64,000 nt of DNA from positions 62,001-126,000 of IMG/VR virus record IMGVR_UViG_3300028558_000016; one strand, written 5' to 3'. Shown here piece after piece: positions 3,149-63,932 of this stretch. The number at the start of each line of letters is the position of its first letter. Within the stretch, counting starts at the first letter, position 1. The translations under genes and the position numbers were made by a program. The notes under the pieces were generated by a model. It saw only the letters and a program-made list of their open reading frames with translations, was not told the DNA's origin and ran no database searches.

Positions 3149-3627
3149 TAACAAAAATTATATCAGGCGGTCAAACCGGTGCGGATCAAGGTGGATTGAA
3201 AGCTGCCAAGAGATATGGAATTGAAACTGGAGGACATTGCCCAAAGGGAGGTCTTACAGAAGATGGCAACAATCCAAACTTGATGAAGGTGTTCGGGCTC
3301 ATTGAAACCACCTCAGACAAATATCCTGCAAGGACATTTGAGAATGCTAAAAACAGCGATGGGACAATAAGATTTGCACACGATTTTAATTCAAGAGGAG
3401 AACTATTGACGCTTAAAGCAATCAACCAATATAACAAACCTCACATTGATGTGAATGTTTCTGCCAATCACCAAACAACACCTAAGATGGTTGCTGACTG
3501 GATAATCAATAACAAAATAAGCGTATTGAATGTTGCAGGAAACAGAGAGTCAACATGCGAAGGATTAGAACAATTCGTTATTGAATTTTTAAGAGAAGTC
3601 ATTAGCCTAACTAATTATGGAAACTAA
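3145..3627 (+). CDS. SLOG-family 'putative molybdenum carrier' protein
   Basis: IISGGQTGAD, RT..N...SDGT, LNVAGNRES. Confidence 0.85.
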   Translation: MITKIISGGQTGADQGGLKAAKRYGIETGGHCPKGGLTEDGNNPNLMKVFGLIETTSDKYPARTFENAKNSDGTIRFAHDFNSRGELLTLKAINQYNKPHIDVNVSANHQTTPKMVADWIINNKISVLNVAGNRESTCEGLEQFVIEFLREVISLTNYGN

Positions 3628-14956: not shown

Positions 14957-15964
14957 TTAATGTGTTCGTAGATATTTATAAAAGATAGGTGATACATCAA
15001 AAGCTTCAAAGAATAAACCATTCACGCCATTTTTCGTTGCCCATTCCTTTAATTCATTAGCTTTTGGATGAGTGTTAGTAACAAACACTTTTTCAAACAC
15101 ACCGGAATTCATTAATTTCAAAAGAGACTCACCAGGAAGAACACCGTGAGTTGCAACTGCATATACCTTAGAAGCTCCGGCATCTTTATATGCTTGACCC
15201 GCACTTATCAAAGAACCACCGGTTCTTATCATGTCATCATAAATGACAACTTTCTTTCCTTTAACGTCGGCATTTATACCAACAATTTCAGTGTCTGTTC
15301 CGCTTTTTCTTCTCTTTGTGATTATCGCACAGTCAACTCCCATTTCATTTGCAAGGGACTCAACCCACTTAGCTCTTCCAGCGTCTGTACTTGCCAATAC
15401 AAAATCAGTATTTGTTTTATAATCCTGCCCTTCTTCGTTGGAAATCTTTTTGCACATTTTCATTATGATCTTCTTGCCATATAAATGCACTGGTTGAATT
15501 GAACCTTCAAGGTAATGAGGAGTTCCTTCACTGTGCAAATCCATAAATATAACACGCATGCGTGTTGCTGGAATTGCTGAAAGCAATCTTGCTCTCGTTT
15601 TTGCTTTAACTATTTCTCCAGGTTGAACTGCTCTTTCCATTGTCGAATAACCAAAATATGGAATAATCAATGTTATGGATAAAGCCTGAGATTTTGCAGC
15701 ATGACATGCCAAATCGAATAACTCAAGTGTCTCAGAATCAGTTGTAGTTCCTCCTATAATTATAACTTGTTTTCCTGCCACAGGATCCATGAACCTGTGA
15801 TAAACTTCACCATCAGGAAATGCTTTTGTTTCCATGGATCCATCTCTTACTATTCTTGCATCTGTTCCACCATAAGATGTTGGCGGTTGATGTTTTGTTT
15901 GGTACGCTAAGAACGCTTGTTCCAGATACTTGTAATTTGTTGTCGAAAATAATATACGTTTCAT
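14957..15964 (-). CDS. prs: ribose-phosphate pyrophosphokinase
   Basis: FPDGE, PYFGYS..ER, DLHS, STDAG, KRR, YDDMIRTGGS, ATHGVL; ATG at 15964 lies after the promoter and UTR motif. Confidence 0.9.
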   Translation of the reverse strand: MKRILFSTTNYKYLEQAFLAYQTKHQPPTSYGGTDARIVRDGSMETKAFPDGEVYHRFMDPVAGKQVIIIGGTTTDSETLELFDLACHAAKSQALSITLIIPYFGYSTMERAVQPGEIVKAKTRARLLSAIPATRMRVIFMDLHSEGTPHYLEGSIQPVHLYGKKIIMKMCKKISNEEGQDYKTNTDFVLASTDAGRAKWVESLANEMGVDCAIITKRRKSGTDTEIVGINADVKGKKVVIYDDMIRTGGSLISAGQAYKDAGASKVYAVATHGVLPGESLLKLMNSGVFEKVFVTNTHPKANELKEWATKNGVNGLFFEAFDVSPIFYKYLRTH

Positions 15965-16012
15965 ACGGTTGGTTTTATAACAGTACAAATATACTAATTA
16001 AATGTCTAAAAT

Positions 16013-16041
16013 AAAAATGCCCGGATCTATGACCCGGGCAT
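16013..16041 (-). terminator. intrinsic terminator closing the DUF2828 + mini-RNA unit
   Basis: ATGCCCGGGTC-ata-GATCCGGGCAT-TTTT; the G:U wobble works only on the minus strand. Confidence 0.85.
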
Positions 16042-16045
16042 CAAT

Positions 16046-16091
16046 TGGTGGGGAATAAGGATTCTCACCAATGCATCATTAAAGATTCCCC
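16046..16091 (-). ncRNA. mini tRNA-like RNA B (46 nt, ends ACCA)
   Basis: GGGGAAU...UGAGAAU-CCUU-AUUCCCC-A-CCA: 7-bp acceptor-like stem with encoded CCA. Confidence 0.65.
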
Positions 16092-16094
16092 AAT

Positions 16095-16153
16095 TGGTGG
16101 GGAAGGAAGACTCTCGCCTCAAGCACGACAACGAATCGTCGAGCACCTTCCCC
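16095..16153 (-). ncRNA. mini tRNA-like RNA A (59 nt, ends ACCA)
   Basis: GGGGAAG-GUGCU-CGACGA(UUCG)UUGUCG-UGCUU-GAGG(CGAGAGU)CUUC-CUUCCCC-A-CCA. Confidence 0.7.
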
Positions 16154-16165
16154 TTATAATGGAAA

Positions 16166-17626
16166 TTAGATTTGTACTACGTCGTATCTTTTATCTGAAA
16201 TGGTTTTCATCATCACGCTGTATGGTGTAAACTCTTCAAGACCGCCTTTAACAATTGATTGCAACAATGCTGGACTAAATCCAGAAACAAGTGCTGAACC
16301 TGTTTGAGAGAATTGAACAGGATTGTTATCCTGTCTTGCATGTACTTTCCACCAAACAGTTTTTGGAACAACATACACGATGTCAGAACCAGAAGCTTTT
16401 AATTTTGCATTTGCCTCAGCATATAATCTCACGACTAATTGTTGTGCTGTTGGATTATCCCAACCTTTGAATGCATCAAATTCCATATCGGAAATAACAA
16501 GCATCATTGTTGGCATTTCATCCTGAACAACTTTATGCTTAACTGCATGATCAAGCAATGAACGGTAAGCAGCTTCAATGTTAGTGTTGTAACCAACATG
16601 TCCACCGATTTGGTTCATTCTGCTTGGAAGATCTTTTCCTTTTAAATACTGAAGCGTTGGAACATCAGTAAATGTCATGAACGCATCTTTAAATGGTCCT
16701 TCGTTTCTTTCGCAAATATACAATGCCAATGACAATGCAACATCCAATGCGCTCAAGTTGTTGTTTCCACCAACTGCACGTTGCATTGAACCTGAAACGT
16801 CAGCCATAGGCATGATTCTTTCGGTTGCACCTTCAAGGAAGTTAGGAAGAGTTTCCCACTGTTTTTGATTAACAATTTTATCTCCACCATGTTTCAATGA
16901 CTTGATAATATCGTATGGATAAACTGCTCCAGCGTTTACTTTAACTCCAACTTCGCCTTTCTTAAGGGCTTCTCTATATTTCACAAAGCGGTCCGTATCT
17001 TGCTTGTGGAAAGCGGTCATGTATCTCGACATGGCCAATGATGGAACATGACTGTAATTAATTGCGCCAAATTCTTTAGCACACATCTTTTGCTCAACAG
17101 TATTGGAAAGCTTCACAAGAAGCTGTCTGAATTCTTTTGGAGATACCTCCATGTGTTTTCTTATCTTGTTAGCAAAAGTTCCTTTACGTGGCATCCACTT
17201 AGCACAAAGACCATGTTCGGATTTAAGCGCGGCAATTATAAATTCGATAGCTGGTTTTTCCAACTCAGTATTTTCAGTAATTAGAAGGTCATCCCATCTT
17301 CCAAACTCAGGAATAATGGAAATATTCTTCTCAGCAACATCCGGATGGTTTGTTGCAAGGAATAATTGGAACACATCACGGAAAACTTGACGCTCGCCAG
17401 AACCTCCACGCACATCACGTGCCCAGAATAAAATTCTCATTGCTGTCATAGGGTCTTCGCCGTATGCAGCAGAGAAAAGCTTAATAAGCCTTTGTTTATC
17501 CTGTCCTCTCATTGCACCAATGTCACCATAAAGGTCAACACACGCATTAAGGGTTGTGGTATTAGTAGTCATACCATTTTCGGTACGACCTGTCTCTGTT
17601 CTCATCGCGTCTACTAATCTTGTCAT
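16166..17626 (-). CDS. DUF2828 + vWA protein (Ro60/TROVE-related)
   Basis: TENG, RDVRGGSGER, GRWDDL, AKWMPR, VPSLAM, MIDAS DVSGSM, ISDMEFD, VSGFSP. Confidence 0.9.
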   Translation of the reverse strand: MTRLVDAMRTETGRTENGMTTNTTTLNACVDLYGDIGAMRGQDKQRLIKLFSAAYGEDPMTAMRILFWARDVRGGSGERQVFRDVFQLFLATNHPDVAEKNISIIPEFGRWDDLLITENTELEKPAIEFIIAALKSEHGLCAKWMPRKGTFANKIRKHMEVSPKEFRQLLVKLSNTVEQKMCAKEFGAINYSHVPSLAMSRYMTAFHKQDTDRFVKYREALKKGEVGVKVNAGAVYPYDIIKSLKHGGDKIVNQKQWETLPNFLEGATERIMPMADVSGSMQRAVGGNNNLSALDVALSLALYICERNEGPFKDAFMTFTDVPTLQYLKGKDLPSRMNQIGGHVGYNTNIEAAYRSLLDHAVKHKVVQDEMPTMMLVISDMEFDAFKGWDNPTAQQLVVRLYAEANAKLKASGSDIVYVVPKTVWWKVHARQDNNPVQFSQTGSALVSGFSPALLQSIVKGGLEEFTPYSVMMKTISDKRYDVVQI

Positions 17627-18743: not shown

Positions 18744-18943
18744 GATTTCTTTTTTGAGTTCCGTAAGTTTTTAAATGCTAAATAAACAAATACTATAATT
18801 ATCGATATTGGCCAAATCAAATAAGCAAGCAAACTAAACAATGGATATTTGTATTCATATTTGGTTGCATTGACTAAATATAAAATACCTCCAAGAGTTA
18901 TTATCATAGTGAATAACGTCGCTATGACTATCGTCACTATCAT
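18740..18943 (-). CDS. small two-TM membrane protein
   Basis: Two hydrophobic segments and a basic tail. Confidence 0.6.
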   Translation of the reverse strand: MIVTIVIATLFTMIITLGGILYLVNATKYEYKYPLFSLLAYLIWPISIIIVFVYLAFKNLRNSKKKS

Positions 18944-19185
18944 TCACCCAAAATTGGTTTGACCGCTTTTAACTCATCTGGAAGTCCTGGAACTTCCTTG
19001 TGAATAAAGCTTGGAACTTTTCCACACTTCTCACATAAATGCAATTCTATTGGAATCATGTGTTCAATTCCATCAGGACTCATCAACGGTGATAGTCTTT
19101 TAACAGCTGTTGCTGATCTGAATAGAATTCCACCACATTCACACGGCTGCCAAGGAGCTTGTGATATATTTACTTTTGTGTCCAT
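18940..19185 (-). CDS. zinc-ribbon protein
   Basis: CECG ... CEKCG. Confidence 0.65.
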   Translation of the reverse strand: MDTKVNISQAPWQPCECGGILFRSATAVKRLSPLMSPDGIEHMIPIELHLCEKCGKVPSFIHKEVPGLPDELKAVKPILGE

Positions 19186-19186
19186 A

Positions 19187-19717
19187 TTATTTCTTTTTAT
19201 TTTTTTTCTTCAATTCTTTTATTGCATTAACATCTCCATCAACTACTTCTGCTTCTTCCTCCACAACCATTATTTCTCCTTTACCATCGCTTTCAAGAGT
19301 TAATCCTGGATTTCCTTTTCCGTCATCGATCAAATAAAACACGCACAGATAATCTCCAGCTATTATTTCACGGTCGCCTAATCCGTGCTCTATGAACCTG
19401 ACATTTATTCTGTCAGTCATCTTTCTTTTCAAGATTCCATAATACGGCTTGAATTTTTCCATTATCTCCTCACTTGCCATCGTTGTATCAAGCACGCAAG
19501 TCATCTCTTCGAGAGGTCTGAAATTATCCTCAACGAATTCATCGTCATAATCTTCACTTCTGAATTCATCATCTGGATCAAATGCCAAATGAAAAATCAT
19601 TCTGCCAACATACGACGGAGAAATTCCTTTTCTCTTCATTATGACTTCAACCTCTTTTCCATGATGGCTGTGCCATTGTGCATTTAGGATGTATCTTCCT
19701 TTTTTTACTATCTTCAT
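19187..19717 (-). CDS. hypothetical protein
   Basis: Coupled ORF. Confidence 0.6.
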   Translation of the reverse strand: MKIVKKGRYILNAQWHSHHGKEVEVIMKRKGISPSYVGRMIFHLAFDPDDEFRSEDYDDEFVEDNFRPLEEMTCVLDTTMASEEIMEKFKPYYGILKRKMTDRINVRFIEHGLGDREIIAGDYLCVFYLIDDGKGNPGLTLESDGKGEIMVVEEEAEVVDGDVNAIKELKKKNKKK

Positions 19718-20562
19718 AATATTGTAACTATTTCAACGTAATCTTTTATTCCGTTCATTTCTTTTGAGTCCTCACAAATAATCACAGGATGCAATTGACC
19801 CAATGTTCCACATCCACATCCGCAATCTGCCATTATGACAGTCTTTGATTTTCCACCATGTACATAATGCTCAATTCTCGGAAAATTAATTCCTTCACTT
19901 AACCTGTGGAAATGTCCATGCACTGACATCGCTTTATTACCTGGAACTTTAAATGCAGAATCCAACTTATCATAATCACGGCTTCTTCCCCATAACAAAG
20001 TATCATCAGTAACATTCTTTGGATCAGACTGCTGTGCATGACAGAAGAAAATCAAATCAGTCTCATGTTTTCTTTTTCCATGCATTTTTAAGAATTTATA
20101 TTCCTCACTTTCTTTTATGATAGGAATATAATCGTATAAATCCAATTTGTATTGTATCTCAAGCGAGTTTAATCCAGTTGTATCAAATGGAATTCCAAAC
20201 ATCTGAACACATGTTTTCATTCCTCCGTTATTCAACCACATCACATGATTTGAGCCGTATGCCTTTTGATCCTCGAAATAAATCTTACTGTCTTCAACGG
20301 TTCCTATCAAGAATTGATCATGATTTCCTATTAAACAAATGGCACCTCTCTCTTGAACGTATTCTTTTACTTTTGCCAATACGTATTTTGAATCAGGACC
20401 TCTGTCGATATAATCTCCAAGGAAAATGAATTGAATTGTAGCATCAATTTTGATGGTTCCATTCTTCTGTTGAATTTCAATCCACGCATCGACATCGGCC
20501 AAAGCCTTATCGAGCTTGTCTCTCGTTCCATGTATATCTGCTATGACAACGTAATATTTCAT
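19714..20562 (-). CDS. metallophosphoesterase (PPP-like Ser/Thr phosphatase)
   Basis: DIHG, GDYIDRG, GNHD, HGH. Confidence 0.9.
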   Translation of the reverse strand: MKYYVVIADIHGTRDKLDKALADVDAWIEIQQKNGTIKIDATIQFIFLGDYIDRGPDSKYVLAKVKEYVQERGAICLIGNHDQFLIGTVEDSKIYFEDQKAYGSNHVMWLNNGGMKTCVQMFGIPFDTTGLNSLEIQYKLDLYDYIPIIKESEEYKFLKMHGKRKHETDLIFFCHAQQSDPKNVTDDTLLWGRSRDYDKLDSAFKVPGNKAMSVHGHFHRLSEGINFPRIEHYVHGGKSKTVIMADCGCGCGTLGQLHPVIICEDSKEMNGIKDYVEIVTIL

Positions 20563-61688: not shown

Positions 61689-61760
61689 GGTTCTGTAGTC
61701 AAAGGGTTACGATTTTTGGTTGTCAACCAAGAGGTGCGGGTTCGAGTCCCGTCAGAATCG
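61689..61760 (+). tRNA. tRNA-Asp(GTC), weak D-arm
   Basis: GGTTCTG/CAGAATC acceptor, loop TTGTCAA, T-arm GCGGG-TTCGAGT-CCCGT. Confidence 0.75.
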
Positions 61761-61762
61761 CT

Positions 61763-61842
61763 GGAGGAAACATGGGTTCGAATCCCATACGAAATGGAAA
61801 CACATTTCGTTCGTTTAGTGGCAGGACGTCTCCCCGAATTGG
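61763..61842 (+). ncRNA. circularly permuted tRNA-like element (YrlA-like Y RNA or permuted tRNA)
   Basis: Order is T-arm, closed acceptor stem, D-arm; the ends form the anticodon-stem equivalent GGAGG/TCTCC. Confidence 0.75.
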
Positions 61843-61848
61843 AAGTTT

Positions 61849-61919
61849 GGTCCGGTGGCCGAGTGGTTAGGCGGAGCTCTGCAAAAGCTCATACGGCGGT
61901 TCGAATCCGTCCCGGACCT
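61849..61919 (+). tRNA. tRNA-Cys(GCA)
   Basis: Canonical cloverleaf, loop CTGCAAA, U73. Confidence 0.95.
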
Positions 61920-62038
61920 CGTGGTGTAGAAGAGTATTGTGAAAATGGAAACCGTGCAAGGTGTAACAGTAAACAAAATGCTTCGTTCGTAAATGATTGG
62001 TCACATGAATTAATTCACTTGGCCATAACTGTAAAATT

Positions 62039-62112
62039 GGTGGCGTAGTTCAGCTGGTTAGAATGCCTGCCTGTCACGCAGGAGGTCACGGGTTCGAGTC
62101 CCGTCGTCACCG
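62039..62112 (+). tRNA. tRNA-Asp(GTC)
   Basis: Canonical cloverleaf, loop CTGTCAC, G73. Confidence 0.95.
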
Positions 62113-62129
62113 CAAATGTTCTTTGAAAT

Positions 62130-62203
62130 GGTCCTATGGTGGAATTGGTTAACACGTCAGTTTCTCAAACTGAAGATTACGGGTTCGATCCCCGTTGGGA
62201 CTA
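62130..62203 (+). tRNA. tRNA-Glu(CTC)
   Basis: Stem TCAGT/ACTGA, loop TTCTCAA. Confidence 0.9.
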
Positions 62204-62207
62204 CGAA

Positions 62208-62301
62208 TGAATTAAGCCGATAGACTGGTTAATGGCGCGTCGACAACGTCCGTGATAAGGTTTCCATGATGAAACTCATGCTGATCACGTAGGCTAATTC
62301 A
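62208..62301 (+). ncRNA. candidate structured RNA between tRNAs
   Basis: Terminal stem TGAATTA(A)GCC/GGCTAATTCA; inner CGTGAT/ATCACG and CATGA/TCATG. Confidence 0.45.
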
Positions 62302-62308
62302 CTTATTT

Positions 62309-62385
62309 GGGGCCTTAGCTCAGTTGGCCAGAGCACCTGCCTTGCACGCAGGGGGTCATCGGTTCGAATCCGATAGGCTCCACCA
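62309..62385 (+). tRNA. tRNA-Ala(TGC), CCA encoded
   Basis: G3:U70, loop CTTGCAC. Confidence 0.95.
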
Positions 62386-62677
62386 AATGATTAGTTGAAG
62401 TAGATGGAAAATCGTTCTGTTGGTAACCATTTTCCAAATTAATGTGATGATGTCTCAGACTTATATCACGAACCAACAAAGAGTGGTGAACTTAAAAATC
62501 ACCGTGAGTAAAAAAGAAGATAACGTTCTTTTGATATTTAAAAACAAGAAGTCGATGATCTACCTTGAAAAAGGTGAATCAACGAAAGTTCCGATCCCAA
62601 TGATCACAACGTGTTTTACGTTGAAGAAGTTTAGATTGAAATTATCGTTCGACTTAATGTGTGAAAAATAATTTCAC

Positions 62678-62751
62678 GCTCCTGTAGTGGAACTGGTTAA
62701 CACGTCCGCCTTTCACGCGGAAGATCGCGGGTTCGAACCCCGTCGGGAGTA
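62678..62751 (+). tRNA. tRNA-Glu(TTC)
   Basis: Stem TCCGC/GCGGA, loop CTTTCAC. Confidence 0.95.
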
Positions 62752-62756
62752 CAAAT

Positions 62757-62842
62757 GTTGCCGTATGCAAATTGGTTTAAGCGAACAGACTTTCAATCTG
62801 TGTTCCGTATGGAACGTGCGGGTTCGAACCCCGTCGGCAATA
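62757..62842 (+). tRNA. atypical class II tRNA: TTC (Glu) anticodon with long variable arm and A73
   Basis: ACAGA-CTTTCAA-TCTGT, then GTTCC-GTAT-GGAAC variable arm. Confidence 0.8.
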
Positions 62843-62928
62843 CAAAAATAAAATAATAGGAGGACCCAGGCTGTGGACGCAACAAAAATGTAATTTCTCT
62901 TTACGAACAGTTTTGCAAAGAGAACGGA

Positions 62929-63720
62929 GTGGAATTTGAAATAGTAAAATCCGTAATTCCACATGATGACACAACTCTTTTCTGCTGTTCAGGAATGCAA
63001 CAGTATAAAAGCAAGTTTAAAGATCAAAATTATAAATGCACGATTTCAAACATCCAACCGTGCATCAGATTAAATGATCTTGAAGAAATAGGAGACAGCA
63101 CTCATTTCCTATACTTCAACATGATGGGATTCTTTTCTTTCAGAGAATGGACTGTGAAAAGAACAATTGATTTTTGGATGTCGTTCATTAATAAGATTGG
63201 TCTTAAAGTGGATTATGTTACAATCCATCCAGACAAAAAAGAATGGAAAGACTTTTATATTGAATACAATGTTGAAGTAAAAGAAGATCTCGAATGCACT
63301 TGGACTGATGGAGACCTTGGAGGATACTGCACAGAATTTTATGTGAACGGTATTGAGATAGGAAACATAGTCAATTGCAATGGTGATTGCATAGATGTTG
63401 GATTTGGTTTAGAAAGACTTGACATGCTTGTCAACAATAAAACAAAAGATGAGATAAGCGTGTTGAAGGAAACCATTGAAAAGATAATTGAAAGCGGTTA
63501 TGTCCCTGGACCTAAACAGCAGGGATACATCTTGAGAAAGCTTTTGAGATTGTTATATGTGAAAGGTGGAAGTATCGATCATGAATTCTTTGTCAAGGAA
63601 AAAGAAAGACAGGAACGATTGGTAAGAAAATATTCTTTGCTAAAACAAAAGCACAAAGACAAAAGCAAAGAATGGTGGTATGGAACACATGGAATTGATT
63701 TGAATGAAATGGGGCCTTAG
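62929..63720 (+). CDS. miniature alanyl-tRNA synthetase (catalytic domain and compressed helical domain; no editing or C-Ala domain)
   Basis: TLF..SGMQQYK, QPCIR.ND...GD..H...F.M.G.FSF, IEIGNIV, IDVGFGLERL, GYILRKLLR, Y.THG. Confidence 0.85.
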   Translation: MEFEIVKSVIPHDDTTLFCCSGMQQYKSKFKDQNYKCTISNIQPCIRLNDLEEIGDSTHFLYFNMMGFFSFREWTVKRTIDFWMSFINKIGLKVDYVTIHPDKKEWKDFYIEYNVEVKEDLECTWTDGDLGGYCTEFYVNGIEIGNIVNCNGDCIDVGFGLERLDMLVNNKTKDEISVLKETIEKIIESGYVPGPKQQGYILRKLLRLLYVKGGSIDHEFFVKEKERQERLVRKYSLLKQKHKDKSKEWWYGTHGIDLNEMGP

Positions 63721-63785
63721 CTCATTTGGCTTAGAGCGCTTGCCTGGCAGGCAAGAGGTGACGGGTTCGAAACCCGTAGGCTCCA
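63711..63785 (+). tRNA. tRNA-Ala(GGC)
   Basis: G3:U70, loop CTGGCAG; overlaps the AlaRS stop codon. Confidence 0.9.
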
Positions 63786-63789
63786 CTAT

Positions 63790-63854
63790 CGGAAAGGATC
63801 ACAACATCCCGTACGAGAAAGAACGACACAACTGTTGTGAGTTGGAAAGTTCTT
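63790..63854 (+). ncRNA. candidate kissing-loop RNA
   Basis: Hairpin loops CACAAC and GTTGTG are exact complements. Confidence 0.5.
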
Positions 63855-63855
63855 C

Positions 63856-63927
63856 GGGATCATAGTATAAGGGCAAGTACGCATCCCGCTCAGGGATGAA
63901 ATGCAGGTTCGAATCCTGTTGGTTCTA
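63856..63927 (+). tRNA. atypical tRNA (nominal CTC anticodon, G33, G3:U70, A73)
   Basis: GGGATCA/TGGTTCT acceptor, CATCC-CGCTCAG-GGATG, canonical T-arm. Confidence 0.65.
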
Positions 63928-63932
63928 CAATT

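What the first reader, a model, noticed from the sequence alone, without database searches (positions are those of the whole stretch)
16013..17626. Ro60-like (DUF2828-vWA) gene co-transcribed with two CCA-ending mini tRNA-like RNAs
Seen: on the minus strand, 12 nt after the DUF2828 stop, come RNA A (16153-16095, 59 nt) and, 3 nt later, RNA B (16091-16046, 46 nt), then a strong terminator. Both start GGGGAA and end UUCCCC-A-CCA, forming a perfect 7-bp acceptor-like stem with discriminator A and encoded CCA. Both carry a T-loop-like YGAGARU at the same distance (4+7 nt) from the discriminator. Their interiors differ (a UUCG hairpin in A, a tiny hairpin in B), and neither has a recognisable D-arm or anticodon. 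Pair 7 co-varies (G-C in A, U-A in B). Known: Ro60/Rsr (TROVE-vWA) proteins bind tRNA-mimicking Y RNAs encoded beside them, and DUF2828-vWA proteins are TROVE relatives; I know of no defined RNA partner for them. Inference: a phage RNP of DUF2828 plus minihelix-type RNAs, for example decoys for tRNA-targeting defence nucleases or toxins, RNA-repair scaffolds, or aminoacyl carriers.
Basis: partly seen in the sequence, partly recalled or inferred. Interest (0 to 1): 0.92.

Follow-up and report, generated by a model that had tools for sequence, protein, structure and literature searches.

The report
Phage Ro60-like gene with tRNA-end-like RNAs
A giant phage gene for a Ro60-shaped RNA-binding ring protein is followed by two tiny RNAs that copy only the acceptor end of a tRNA, and relatives of this gene in hundreds of phages also carry small RNAs beside them, so this looks like a new branch of the known Ro60/Y-RNA partnership.

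Summary
On the minus strand, a 486-aa DUF2828/DUF7788 gene (17626-16166) is followed by RNA A (16153-16095), AUU, RNA B (16091-16046) and a strong terminator.

Both RNAs have a perfect 7-bp GGGGAA./.UUCCCC stem, discriminator A, an encoded CCA and a T-loop-like heptaloop. ARAGORN and Rfam recognise neither.

The protein models confidently (pLDDT 90.8). Its only significant full-length PDB matches are Ro60/TROVE rings.

One copy of the same minihelix sits at the same place in three of the eight closest homologs (78-94% identity). A fourth contig breaks off just as one appears to begin.

More distant homologs (29-55%) carry a different small hairpin RNA family instead. It has a 7-8-bp stem and an invariant CAGCA core (usually UWCAGCAA). 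It is absent from Rfam and unannotated in the cultured-phage records inspected. It lies on the gene's strand, directly beside the gene or between neighbouring tRNA genes, for example in Felix O1-like, Listeria, Staphylococcus and Campylobacter phages.

Best reading: Y-RNA-like partners of a Ro60-fold protein, here reduced to a tRNA acceptor/T-arm minihelix. Binding, processing and function were not tested. This is a new variant of a known kind.

The parts
16166..17626 (-). 486-aa DUF2828 + DUF7788 (vWA) gene. Predicted Ro60-fold ring protein with an intact MIDAS motif (D276-x-S278-x-S280).
   Evidence: ORF list. Pfam PF11443 2e-33 and PF25043 1.6e-32. phrog_850 'RNA-binding protein' 6.6e-133. 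AF2 pLDDT 90.8, pTM 0.90. Foldseek top hits 9kop, 1yvr, 2i91 and 9nf8, E 3e-8 to 2e-6, TM up to 0.64. Invariant DxSxS in the 47-sequence alignment.
16154..16165 (-). 12-nt spacer between the stop codon and RNA A (UUUCCAUUAUAA).
   Evidence: Read directly. It is too short to hold a two-hexamer sigma-70-type promoter, and none was found there.
16095..16153 (-). RNA A, 59 nt. Acceptor-like stem 16153-16147 / 16105-16099. UUCG hairpin 16141-16126. T-arm-like GAGG-CGAGAGU-CUUC at 16120-16106. Discriminator A at 16098. CCA at 16097-16095.
   Evidence: Sequence. MFE -27.4 kcal/mol, z -2.9. Seed of model R2, so its score of 77 bits follows by construction.
16092..16094 (-). AUU spacer. 'ACCA-AUU' follows the CCA in every copy.
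16046..16091 (-). RNA B, 46 nt. Acceptor-like stem 16091-16085 / 16056-16050. T-loop-like UGAGAAU at 16067-16061 with a weak stem. Discriminator A at 16049. CCA at 16048-16046.
   Evidence: Sequence. It was not in the seed of model R2, yet R2 found it (24.1 bits, E 1e-3 over 561 kb). Its fold alone is not better than shuffles (z -0.5).
16007..16045 (-). AUUG, then an intrinsic terminator: 12-bp stem-loop 16042-16016 and a T-run.
   Evidence: dG -20.1, z -6.0. Terminator scan.
15986..15997 (-). Conserved TTAGTATATTTG box between the terminator and the next gene (PRPP synthetase). It marks the start of the next transcription unit. It does not belong to the RNAs and is listed only as a boundary.
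   Evidence: Conserved, with small variations, downstream of the terminator in L095, L096, L099, L100 and L102. Calling it a promoter is an inference.

Best explanation
RNA A and RNA B are the small-RNA partners of the Ro60-fold protein encoded just upstream. They would be functional analogues of Y RNAs (YrlA type), reduced to a tRNA acceptor-stem/T-arm minihelix with a genome-encoded ACCA end.

**Proposed course**
1. The gene and both RNAs are made as one transcript that ends at the terminator (inferred).
2. The minihelices are cut out by the host's tRNA-processing enzymes: RNase P at G+1, and trimming back to CCA at the 3' end (inferred from the minimal-substrate rules for RNase P and from M. 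smegmatis YrlA, PMC4201824).
3. The closed stem with its single-stranded ACCA tail binds the ring protein (inferred).
4. The resulting RNP acts on RNA during infection, in RNA surveillance or repair, or in countering a host defence.

**What is shown**
- the anatomy;
- the Ro60 fold;
- conservation of the element in close relatives;
- a family-wide linkage of DUF2828 genes to small structured RNAs.

**What is not shown**
- co-transcription, processing and binding;
- what the RNP does.
For: 1. **Ro60 fold.** All 8 significant Foldseek hits are Ro60/TROVE over the full length, from a confident model.

2. **Conservation in the clade.**
   - L095 (94% aa identity), L096 (87%) and L101 (78%) each have one CCA-ending minihelix between the stop codon and the terminator.
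   - L097 (85%) starts one before its contig ends.
   - Model R2, built from three A-type copies, recovers the two B-type copies (E 1e-6 and 1e-3). In 561 kb it otherwise finds only weak hits (E >= 0.014), three of them true tRNA genes.
   - 96.5% of pair cells are paired. Pairs 7 and 8 carry compensatory changes. L095 keeps exactly 7 bp although its stem is shifted by one pair.

3. **Encoded CCA.** It is present in 5 of 5 minihelices but in only 1 of the 9 tRNA genes of the window.

4. **The niche is an RNA niche family-wide.**
   - Model R1 (7-8-bp stem plus UWCAGCAA) gives 91 hits in 633 kb of DUF2828 loci. 88 are on the gene's strand.
   - 59 of the 62 hits with E<0.01 lie within about 700 nt of the ORF (my tally from the table). 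Many are in loci that were not in the seed, and some are upstream of the gene.
   - The same motif lies beside the gene in Staphylococcus phage 6ec, Listeria LP-064, Campylobacter Los1, Felix O1-like UAB_Phi87, Bacillus FADO and mycobacteriophage Snenia.
   - Copies fit exactly into gaps between tRNA genes.

5. **Precedent.**
   - Ro60 genes carry adjacent, often tandem, tRNA-mimicking Y RNAs, also in phages. M. smegmatis YrlA has a 7-bp acceptor stem, is cut by RNase P and receives CCA (PMC4201824).
   - Thermus phage phiLo Ro60 binds two adjacent Yrl RNAs (PMC12135203).

6. **A tested function in a likely relative.** A Ro60-like gene directly upstream of the tRNA block in Felixounavirus Bas63 counters the Ppl defence (10.1101/2024.10.10.617714).
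Against: - No experiment or RNA-seq bears on these RNAs.
- Statistical support for the structure is weak. There are only five sequences, and most pairs never vary (28 of 500 shuffles reach the observed values).
- RNA B's T stem is poor, and its fold is no better than shuffles.
- Close relatives L100 and L102/L103 have only a terminator, and L127 has no such RNA within 10 kb. An adjacent RNA is therefore not obligatory.
- L098/L099 carry a third, unrelated element in the same place.
- The minihelices do not match model R1. They lack the published Ro-binding motif GNCGAAN0-1G: only GACGAA is present in L096 and L101, and GACGAU in RNA A.
- The stem-plus-loop length is 11 bp in three copies, against 12 in tRNA.
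Confidence: 0.5

Rival explanations
1. The minihelices are cis-acting 3'-UTR elements, not trans-acting RNAs. They would act as tRNA-like 'punctuation' that directs RNase P or 3'-exonuclease processing and so sets the stability or 3' end of the DUF2828 mRNA. This would resemble tRNA-like structures at the 3' ends of other transcripts.
For: In this clade they are always inside the 3' UTR, between stop codon and terminator. Acceptor/T-arm minihelices with RCCA are minimal RNase P substrates (established knowledge). Close relatives do without them.
Against: RNase P cleavage at G+1 would remove the terminator hairpin from the mRNA, which is an odd way to stabilise it. The tandem duplication and the strictly kept ACCA are not needed for a cleavage signal. 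In distant homologs the RNAs of the same niche also lie upstream of the gene, or about 2 kb away between tRNA genes, which fits free-standing RNAs better.
Confidence: 0.17
2. The RNAs are free-standing mimics of the tRNA acceptor end that work without the Ro60-like protein. They could be decoys or sponges for host enzymes or defence toxins that act on tRNA 3' ends, or carriers of an amino acid. Their position after DUF2828 would then be only a convenient expression site.
For: Perfect 7-bp stem, discriminator A and encoded CCA while the phage's own tRNAs mostly lack CCA. The acceptor sequence is strongly conserved. Phage tRNAs are known to offset tRNA-targeting defences (established knowledge).
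Against: The element is found only behind DUF2828 genes in every copy recovered. There is no G3-U70 or other obvious strong identity set for charging. The heptaloop lacks U55 and C56. No target is known.
Confidence: 0.15
3. The RNAs are decaying remnants of tRNA genes (internally deleted pseudo-tRNAs) with no function. This would reflect the frequent placement of DUF2828 genes inside or beside tRNA arrays.
For: Many homologs sit directly beside tRNA genes. A-type copies keep U8 and G10-C-U-C/U at tRNA positions 8-13 (L096, L101). True tRNAs are among the next-best hits of model R2.
Against: Stems stay perfect and CCA intact across phages whose proteins differ by up to 22%, while the neighbouring terminator has been replaced (L101). 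The L095 stem shift keeps 7 bp. There is a tandem duplicate in the window. The heptaloop is conserved in a non-tRNA form (UGUGAAU).
Confidence: 0.06

Closest known systems
Bacterial and phage Ro60 (Rsr) with Y RNAs of the YrlA/YrlB type (Chen et al. 2014, PMC4201824; Thermus phage phiLo Ro60 with Yrl1/Yrl2, PMC12135203)
   Same: A ring-plus-vWA protein of the Ro60 fold. One to three small RNAs encoded directly beside it on the same strand, often in tandem. The RNAs mimic parts of tRNA. In M. smegmatis, YrlA has a 7-bp acceptor stem, is cut by RNase P and gains CCA.
   Different: - The protein is DUF2828/DUF7788, not Pfam TROVE, and the relation is visible only by structure.
- The RNAs are far smaller (46-59 nt against about 80-150 nt).
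- They have no separate Ro-binding stem with GNCGAAN0-1G and no D-arm.
- CCA is encoded rather than added.
- The 5'/3' stem is itself the acceptor mimic.
tRNA acceptor-T-arm minihelices (minimal substrates of RNase P, the CCA-adding enzyme and some aminoacyl-tRNA synthetases) and the tRNA-like domain of tmRNA
   Same: A 7-bp stem stacked on a short hairpin with a 7-nt loop that has U at loop position 1 (C in RNA A), R at 4 and A at 5. Discriminator A and a single-stranded CCA.
   Different: - The stack is 11 bp in three copies (12 in L096 and L101).
- Loop positions 2-3 are G-N, not U-C.
- There is no G3-U70, no tag reading frame and no anticodon arm.
- tRNA and tmRNA models do not detect them.
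tRNA-like small RNAs cut from the 3' end of a longer transcript (mascRNA of MALAT1), and small stable RNAs encoded within phage tRNA clusters (T4 species 1 and 2 RNAs) - both from memory, as leads only
   Same: A small tRNA-like RNA lying at the 3' end of another gene's transcript or among tRNA genes, presumably released by tRNA-processing enzymes.
   Different: Those systems have no Ro60-like partner gene. No sequence or model similarity was tested here.
Bas63 gp130, a Ro60-like counter of the Ppl defence system in a Felixounavirus (PhageMaP preprint 10.1101/2024.10.10.617714)
   Same: By synteny it is probably a DUF2828 homolog: a Ro60-like gene directly upstream of the tRNA block, as in UAB_Phi87. 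It is the only family member with a tested phenotype.
   Different: I could not verify its sequence identity. The RNAs there would be of the UWCAGCAA type lying between tRNA genes, not CCA minihelices. The authors only guessed that some 'tRNAs' are Y RNAs.

Membership tests
Ro60 / TROVE proteins | Sequence match to the TROVE domain | tested here: not met
   Pfam gives only DUF2828 and DUF7788. An 11-sequence profile against PDB sequences reaches TROVE proteins only at E 0.43, over the MIDAS stretch.
Ro60 / TROVE proteins | Helical-repeat ring followed by a vWA domain with a MIDAS motif | tested here: met
   AF2 pLDDT 90.8, pTM 0.90. Foldseek: 9kop, 1yvr, 2i91, 9nf8, 9nfa, 9nep and 1yvp at E 3e-8 to 2e-6 over 528-591 aligned columns, with TM up to 0.64; the next hits are vWA domains only. 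DxSxS is invariant in 47 sequences.
Ro60 / TROVE proteins | Small structured RNA gene(s) encoded beside the protein gene | tested here: met
   Minihelices in the window and in L095, L096 and L101. Model R1 RNAs beside the gene in at least 47 of the 84 more distant IMG/VR loci (my tally from the table) and in cultured phages.
Ro60 / TROVE proteins | Physical binding of the RNA by the protein | not testable with these tools
   Needs EMSA, or co-purification of RNA with the protein.
Y RNA (YrlA type) | Long 5'/3' stem carrying GNCGAAN0-1G, plus a tRNA-like domain with T- and D-arms | tested here: not met
   No Rfam match even at E<=10. Only GACGAA is present in L096 and L101, and GACGAU in RNA A. 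The B-type copies have none. There is no D-arm.
tRNA | Cloverleaf with an anticodon arm, detected by tRNA models | tested here: not met
   ARAGORN tRNAs in the window but not these RNAs. The Rfam tRNA model gives no hit at E<=10. The loops have G where U33 would be.
tRNA | 7-bp acceptor stem, discriminator base, 3' CCA | tested here: met
   Read directly. Present in all five copies.
tRNA | T-arm: 5-bp stem and a UUCRANY loop | tested here: inconclusive
   The stem is 4 bp (2 bp in RNA B). The loops UGUGAAU, UGAGAAU and CGAGAGU keep R57 and A58, and four of the five keep U54 (RNA A has C), but all have G-N at positions 55-56. Pairing is 90% with no compensatory change.
tmRNA tRNA-like domain | G3-U70 wobble pair, canonical T-loop, tag reading frame | tested here: not met
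   Pair 3 is G-C in all copies. ARAGORN finds no tmRNA here, and the Rfam tmRNA model gives no hit.

The most novel reading that the evidence does not exclude
DUF2828 proteins are a second and much more widespread phage branch of Ro60-like ribonucleoproteins. Each would carry exchangeable small-RNA modules encoded beside the gene: the UWCAGCAA hairpin family in most phages, a CCA-ending tRNA acceptor minihelix in this clade, and a third type in L098/L099. The RNP would be a counter-defence or RNA-repair device. In the minihelix clade, the ring protein would hold a mimic of the tRNA 3' end that intercepts host enzymes acting on tRNA acceptor ends.
Probability: 0.3. Interest if true: 0.85.

Novelty: new variant of a known kind. 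Interest (0 to 1): 0.72.

Why it matters
Ro60 and its Y RNAs are a classic but mechanistically open system, and phage versions have only begun to be studied.

- **A large, accessible family.** DUF2828 homologs occur in at least 709 sequenced phage genomes. These include laboratory and therapy-relevant groups: Felix O1-like, Listeria P100-like, Staphylococcus 6ec-like, Campylobacter phages and mycobacteriophages. They are mostly annotated 'hypothetical' or 'RNA-binding protein', and I found no RNA partner described for them.
- **Candidate RNAs to test.** These genes regularly travel with small structured RNAs that no annotation or Rfam model captures. That gives concrete RNAs to test, for example in Felix O1-like phages, where a Ro60-like gene was reported to counter a defence system.
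- **A minimal case.** The CCA-ending minihelices would be the smallest tRNA-mimicking partner RNAs of a Ro60-type protein. They offer a clean system for asking what the tRNA-like part of Y RNAs is for.

Tried and rejected
- **Known RNA families.** Rfam 15 was run at E<=10 on the region, and at gathering score and E<=0.5 on 20 and 9 related loci. It returned only tRNA, tmRNA and chance hits.
- **ARAGORN.** It does not call the RNAs.
- **Close DNA relatives.** Megablast of the locus against 50,697 phage records found nothing.
- **Exact-pattern scans for more copies.**
  - Viral contigs returned only the source contig.
  - Metagenome contigs returned the source contig, two copies of the L101 type, true tRNAs and coding-sequence chance matches.
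  - Genome contigs returned two chance matches inside coding sequence.
  - No extra diversity was gained.
- **'RNA A and B are diverged members of the UWCAGCAA family.'** Rejected. Model R1 gives nothing above noise at the RNAs with filters off.
- **'tmRNA-like domain or alanine acceptor mimic.'** Rejected. Pair 3 is G-C, and no tmRNA model hits. The CUCGACGA resemblance to the tmRNA D-loop analogue is from memory and is offset by 5 nt.
- **'The heptaloop is an anticodon loop of an armless tRNA.'** Rejected. It has G at the U33 position.
- **Hairpin between A's 3' strand and B's 5' strand (16104-16086).** This is a by-product of the tandem duplication and is absent in the single-copy relatives.
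- **Search for the RNA elsewhere in a relative that lacks it.** Nothing was found within +-10 kb in L127.
- **Bas63 locus.** My one guess at its accession was wrong, so its identity with DUF2828 rests on synteny only.
- **Caveat on R1 covariation.** The covariation test of the R1 stem is partly circular, because the seed sequences were picked by complementarity. The unbiased evidence is the strand and position of model hits in non-seed loci.
Full report
**1. The observation**

- The 486-aa ORF runs from 17626 to 16166 and ends with TAA at 16168-16166.
- After 12 nt comes RNA A (16153-16095, 59 nt), then AUU, then RNA B (16091-16046, 46 nt).
- Then come AUUG and a 12-bp GC-rich hairpin with a T-run (16042-16016; dG -20.1 kcal/mol, z -6.0).

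Both RNAs begin GGGGAA and end UUCCCC-A-CCA, which gives a perfect 7-bp stem. Pair 7 is G-C in A and U-A in B.

Each has a heptaloop 11 nt before the discriminator: CGAGAGU in A and UGAGAAU in B. In A it is closed by GAGG/CUUC. In B only two of the four flanking pairs form.

RNA A also has a CGACGA-UUCG-UUGUCG hairpin. It folds well (-27.4 kcal/mol, z -2.9). RNA B alone folds no better than shuffles.

A bare '7-bp stem plus NCCA' is not rare: 14 in the window against about 7 in shuffles. The full descriptor is rare. It found only the minihelices and true tRNAs in about 780 kb, against about 0.1 expected.

ARAGORN and Rfam do not recognise the RNAs. Only one of the nine tRNA genes in the window encodes CCA, so the encoded CCA on both RNAs is a feature, not a habit of this genome.

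**2. The protein**

- Pfam gives DUF2828 and DUF7788, and PHROGs gives phrog_850 'RNA-binding protein'.
- Sequence profiles do not reach Ro60.
- An AlphaFold2 model built from 47 sequences is confident (pLDDT 90.8, pTM 0.90).
- All eight Foldseek matches in the PDB with E<=0.001 are Ro60/TROVE rings aligned over the full length. They are Xenopus and human Ro60 and the Thermus phage phiLo homolog, at E 3e-8 to 2e-6 and TM up to 0.64. Isolated vWA domains follow.
- The MIDAS motif DxSxS is invariant.

The gene therefore encodes a Ro60-fold protein that is not a sequence member of Pfam TROVE.

**3. Close relatives**

The window comes from a 482-kb IMG/VR contig and has no near DNA match among sequenced phages. 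A search of 5.8 billion proteins gave eight homologs at 77-94% identity. The next tier is at about 54%.

Their contigs show the following.

| Locus (aa identity) | What follows the stop codon |
|---|---|
| L095 (94%) | One minihelix of the B type, starting right after the stop codon |
| L096 (87%), L101 (78%) | One minihelix of the A type each |
| L097 (85%) | Contig breaks off 17 nt after the stop, having begun GGGAAAGUCG |
| L098, L099 (81%) | A different conserved two-hairpin element |
| L100 (78%), L102/L103 (77%) | Only a terminator |

All copies end NCUUCCC(C)-ACCA-AUUR.

- A covariance model built from the three A-type copies finds the two B-type copies (E 1e-6 and 1e-3 in 561 kb). Its remaining hits are weak (E >= 0.014), and three of the five are true tRNA genes.
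- On the five sequences, 96.5% of pair cells are paired, and pairs 7 and 8 carry compensatory changes. The other pairs never vary, so the statistics are weak (28 of 500 shuffles reach the observed values).
- L095 has lost one G-C pair at the top of the stem and gained an A-U pair at the bottom, which keeps 7 bp.
- The stem-plus-T-stem stack is 11 bp in three copies and 12 bp, as in tRNA, in L096 and L101.
- A-type copies keep U8 and G10-C-U-C/U at the tRNA positions. This hints at descent from a tRNA gene.
- L127, the 77% relative with 10 kb on either side, has the window's gene order but no such RNA. The adjacent RNA is therefore facultative in this clade.

**4. Distant relatives: a second RNA family**

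Eighty IMG/VR loci at 44-54% identity and twelve earlier ones were read downstream of the gene.

Most show a conserved non-coding motif. It has a 7-8-bp stem, usually beginning GG after AA. One to three nucleotides later comes UWCAGCAA. An A/U/C-rich loop of 20 to about 300 nt follows. The complementary strand ends in CC and is followed by YG.

The motif often occurs in two or three tandem copies.

Thirty short members align with 88.6% pairing and strong covariation. This test is partly circular, because I chose the members by complementarity.

The unbiased test is the covariance model R1.
- In 633 kb of DUF2828 loci it gives 91 hits, 88 of them on the gene's strand.
- By my tally of the table, 59 of the 62 hits with E<0.01 lie within about 700 nt of the ORF. 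Many are in loci outside the seed, where the copies lie just upstream of the gene (L003, L005, L006, L011, L079, L083-L085, L090, L093, L094).
- In cultured phages whose proteins are only 29-40% identical to the window's, R1 again hits next to the gene:
  - three tandem copies after it in Staphylococcus phage 6ec;
  - two or three before it in Listeria phage LP-064;
  - one before it in Campylobacter phage Los1 and in Bacillus phage FADO;
  - one after it in mycobacteriophage Snenia;
  - two in Felix O1-like UAB_Phi87.
- In UAB_Phi87 and in L090 the copies fit exactly into gaps between tRNA genes. This suggests release by tRNA processing.
- None is annotated in these records, and Rfam has no match.
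- Some long forms contain a canonical T-arm (for example GGUUCAAACC in L024 and L029).
- L090 also holds a 66-nt CCA-ending three-way tRNA-like RNA that ARAGORN does not call.
- The window and its clade have no R1 match.

**5. Interpretation**

Ro60 genes in bacteria and phages are known to carry one or more Y RNAs beside them, with a tRNA-like domain. M. smegmatis YrlA has a 7-bp acceptor stem, is cut by RNase P and receives CCA in vivo (PMC4201824). The Ro60 of Thermus phage phiLo binds two adjacent Yrl RNAs and host PNPase (PMC12135203). TROVE proteins in jumbo phages have been read as RNA-repair platforms (PMC7824862).

The DUF2828 branch shows the same genomic logic with different RNAs. 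The most economical reading is that RNA A and B are the partner RNAs of this Ro60-fold protein, here reduced to the acceptor/T-arm half of a tRNA.

The R1 stem (AA-GG...CC-YG) and the minihelix stem (AA-GGGG...CCCC-ACCA) have similar bases. This may reflect a shared protein contact, but that is speculation.

Relatives have a metallophosphoesterase and an RNA ligase a few genes upstream. The window keeps the phosphoesterase (19714-20562) but not the ligase at that place.

In Felixounavirus Bas63, a Ro60-like gene directly upstream of the tRNA block counters the Ppl defence (10.1101/2024.10.10.617714). By synteny it is probably a DUF2828 homolog, but I could not verify this.

RNA repair and counter-defence are thus the two plausible arenas. 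Nothing here decides between them.

**6. Rivals**

- A cis-acting 3'-UTR processing or stability element.
- A protein-independent mimic of the tRNA 3' end (decoy or carrier).
- A decaying tRNA remnant.

The evidence for and against each is in the Rival explanations section. None is excluded by computation alone. The last is the least likely, given intact stems and CCA across 22% protein divergence.

**7. Verdict**

- The Ro60 relationship is supported by structure prediction.
- The link between DUF2828 genes and adjacent small RNAs is supported by comparative genomics well beyond this window.
- The particular CCA-ending minihelix is confined to one small clade of uncultured phages.
- Binding, processing and function remain untested.

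I rate it a new variant of a known kind (Ro60/Y-RNA systems). The wider, unannotated UWCAGCAA RNA family is an equally valuable by-product.

Noticed in passing
Examples: L036:1531-1595, L087:3965-4091, L120:2948-3162 (Staphylococcus phage 6ec NC_024355.1 8336-8550), L117:1081-1286 (Listeria phage LP-064 KJ094029.1, minus strand 35005-34800), L116:3177-3250 and 3344-3404 (UAB_Phi87 NC_027360.1, minus strand 3944-3871 and 3777-3717): A conserved small hairpin RNA family that is unannotated in the cultured-phage records inspected. It has a 7-8-bp stem starting GG, then UWCAGCAA, a variable A/U/C-rich loop, and a closing strand ending CC-YG. It lies on the gene's strand directly beside DUF2828 genes or between neighbouring tRNA genes, often in tandem. 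It has no Rfam match.
   Followed up: yes
L098:4465-4560 and L099:3074-3170: Two close relatives (81% protein identity) carry a third kind of conserved element in the same 3'-UTR position. It has a U/A-rich hairpin and a CUC...CCC-loop-GGG...GAG hairpin before the terminator, with no CCA end and no UWCAGCAA.
   Followed up: partly
L090:243-308: A 66-nt CCA-ending RNA with a 7-bp acceptor stem, a central hairpin and a 5-bp T-arm-like hairpin (fold z -4.6). It sits between tRNA-Thr and tRNA-Pro in the tRNA array of a 46%-identity DUF2828 locus and is not called by ARAGORN. It is a second, independent tRNA-like mini RNA near a DUF2828 gene.
   Followed up: partly
L107:2033-4838 (metagenome contig JACXTT010030551.1, minus strand): An array of about 17 full-length tRNA genes whose T-loops mostly read UGCGARU or UGCAAUU (G at position 55 instead of U). 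In the copies I read, the D-loops lack the usual GG. One has the loop CGAGAGU, identical to RNA A's. It was found only through the pattern scan, and no DUF2828 link is known.
   Followed up: no
window 61689-63928: A cluster of nine tRNA genes with duplicated Asp, Glu and Ala species. Only tRNA-Ala at 62309-62385 encodes its CCA. The 87-nt gene at 62757-62843, called tRNA-Glu, has an unusually long extra arm.
   Followed up: partly
window 15986-15997 (minus strand) and 15962-15964: A TTAGTATATTTG box, conserved with small variations, follows the terminator in the window and in L095, L096, L099, L100 and L102. It is probably a phage promoter for the PRPP synthetase gene. That gene more likely starts at the ATG at 15964-15962 than at the TTG at 15988 listed mechanically.
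   Followed up: no
window 18940-20562, compared with L098:210-1274 and L127:5401-7831: Relatives have metallophosphoesterase, a 174-aa ORF and an RNA ligase (PF09414) a few genes upstream of DUF2828. The window and L095 keep the phosphoesterase and the 176-aa ORF but have no RNA ligase at that place.
   Followed up: partly
window 16086-16104 (minus strand): The 3' strand of RNA A and the 5' strand of RNA B can pair with each other (UUCCCC-ACCAAUU-GGGGAA), followed by a U-rich stretch. This is a terminator-like alternative fold that exists only because of the tandem duplication.
   Followed up: partly
L121:159-1432 (Campylobacter phage Los1) and L122:358-1426 (Bacillus phage FADO): Stretches of more than 1 kb without annotated features lie directly upstream of the DUF2828 gene. 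In Los1 the stretch holds four tRNA genes found by ARAGORN plus a UWCAGCAA RNA. In FADO, where no tRNA scan was run, it holds a UWCAGCAA RNA.
   Followed up: partly
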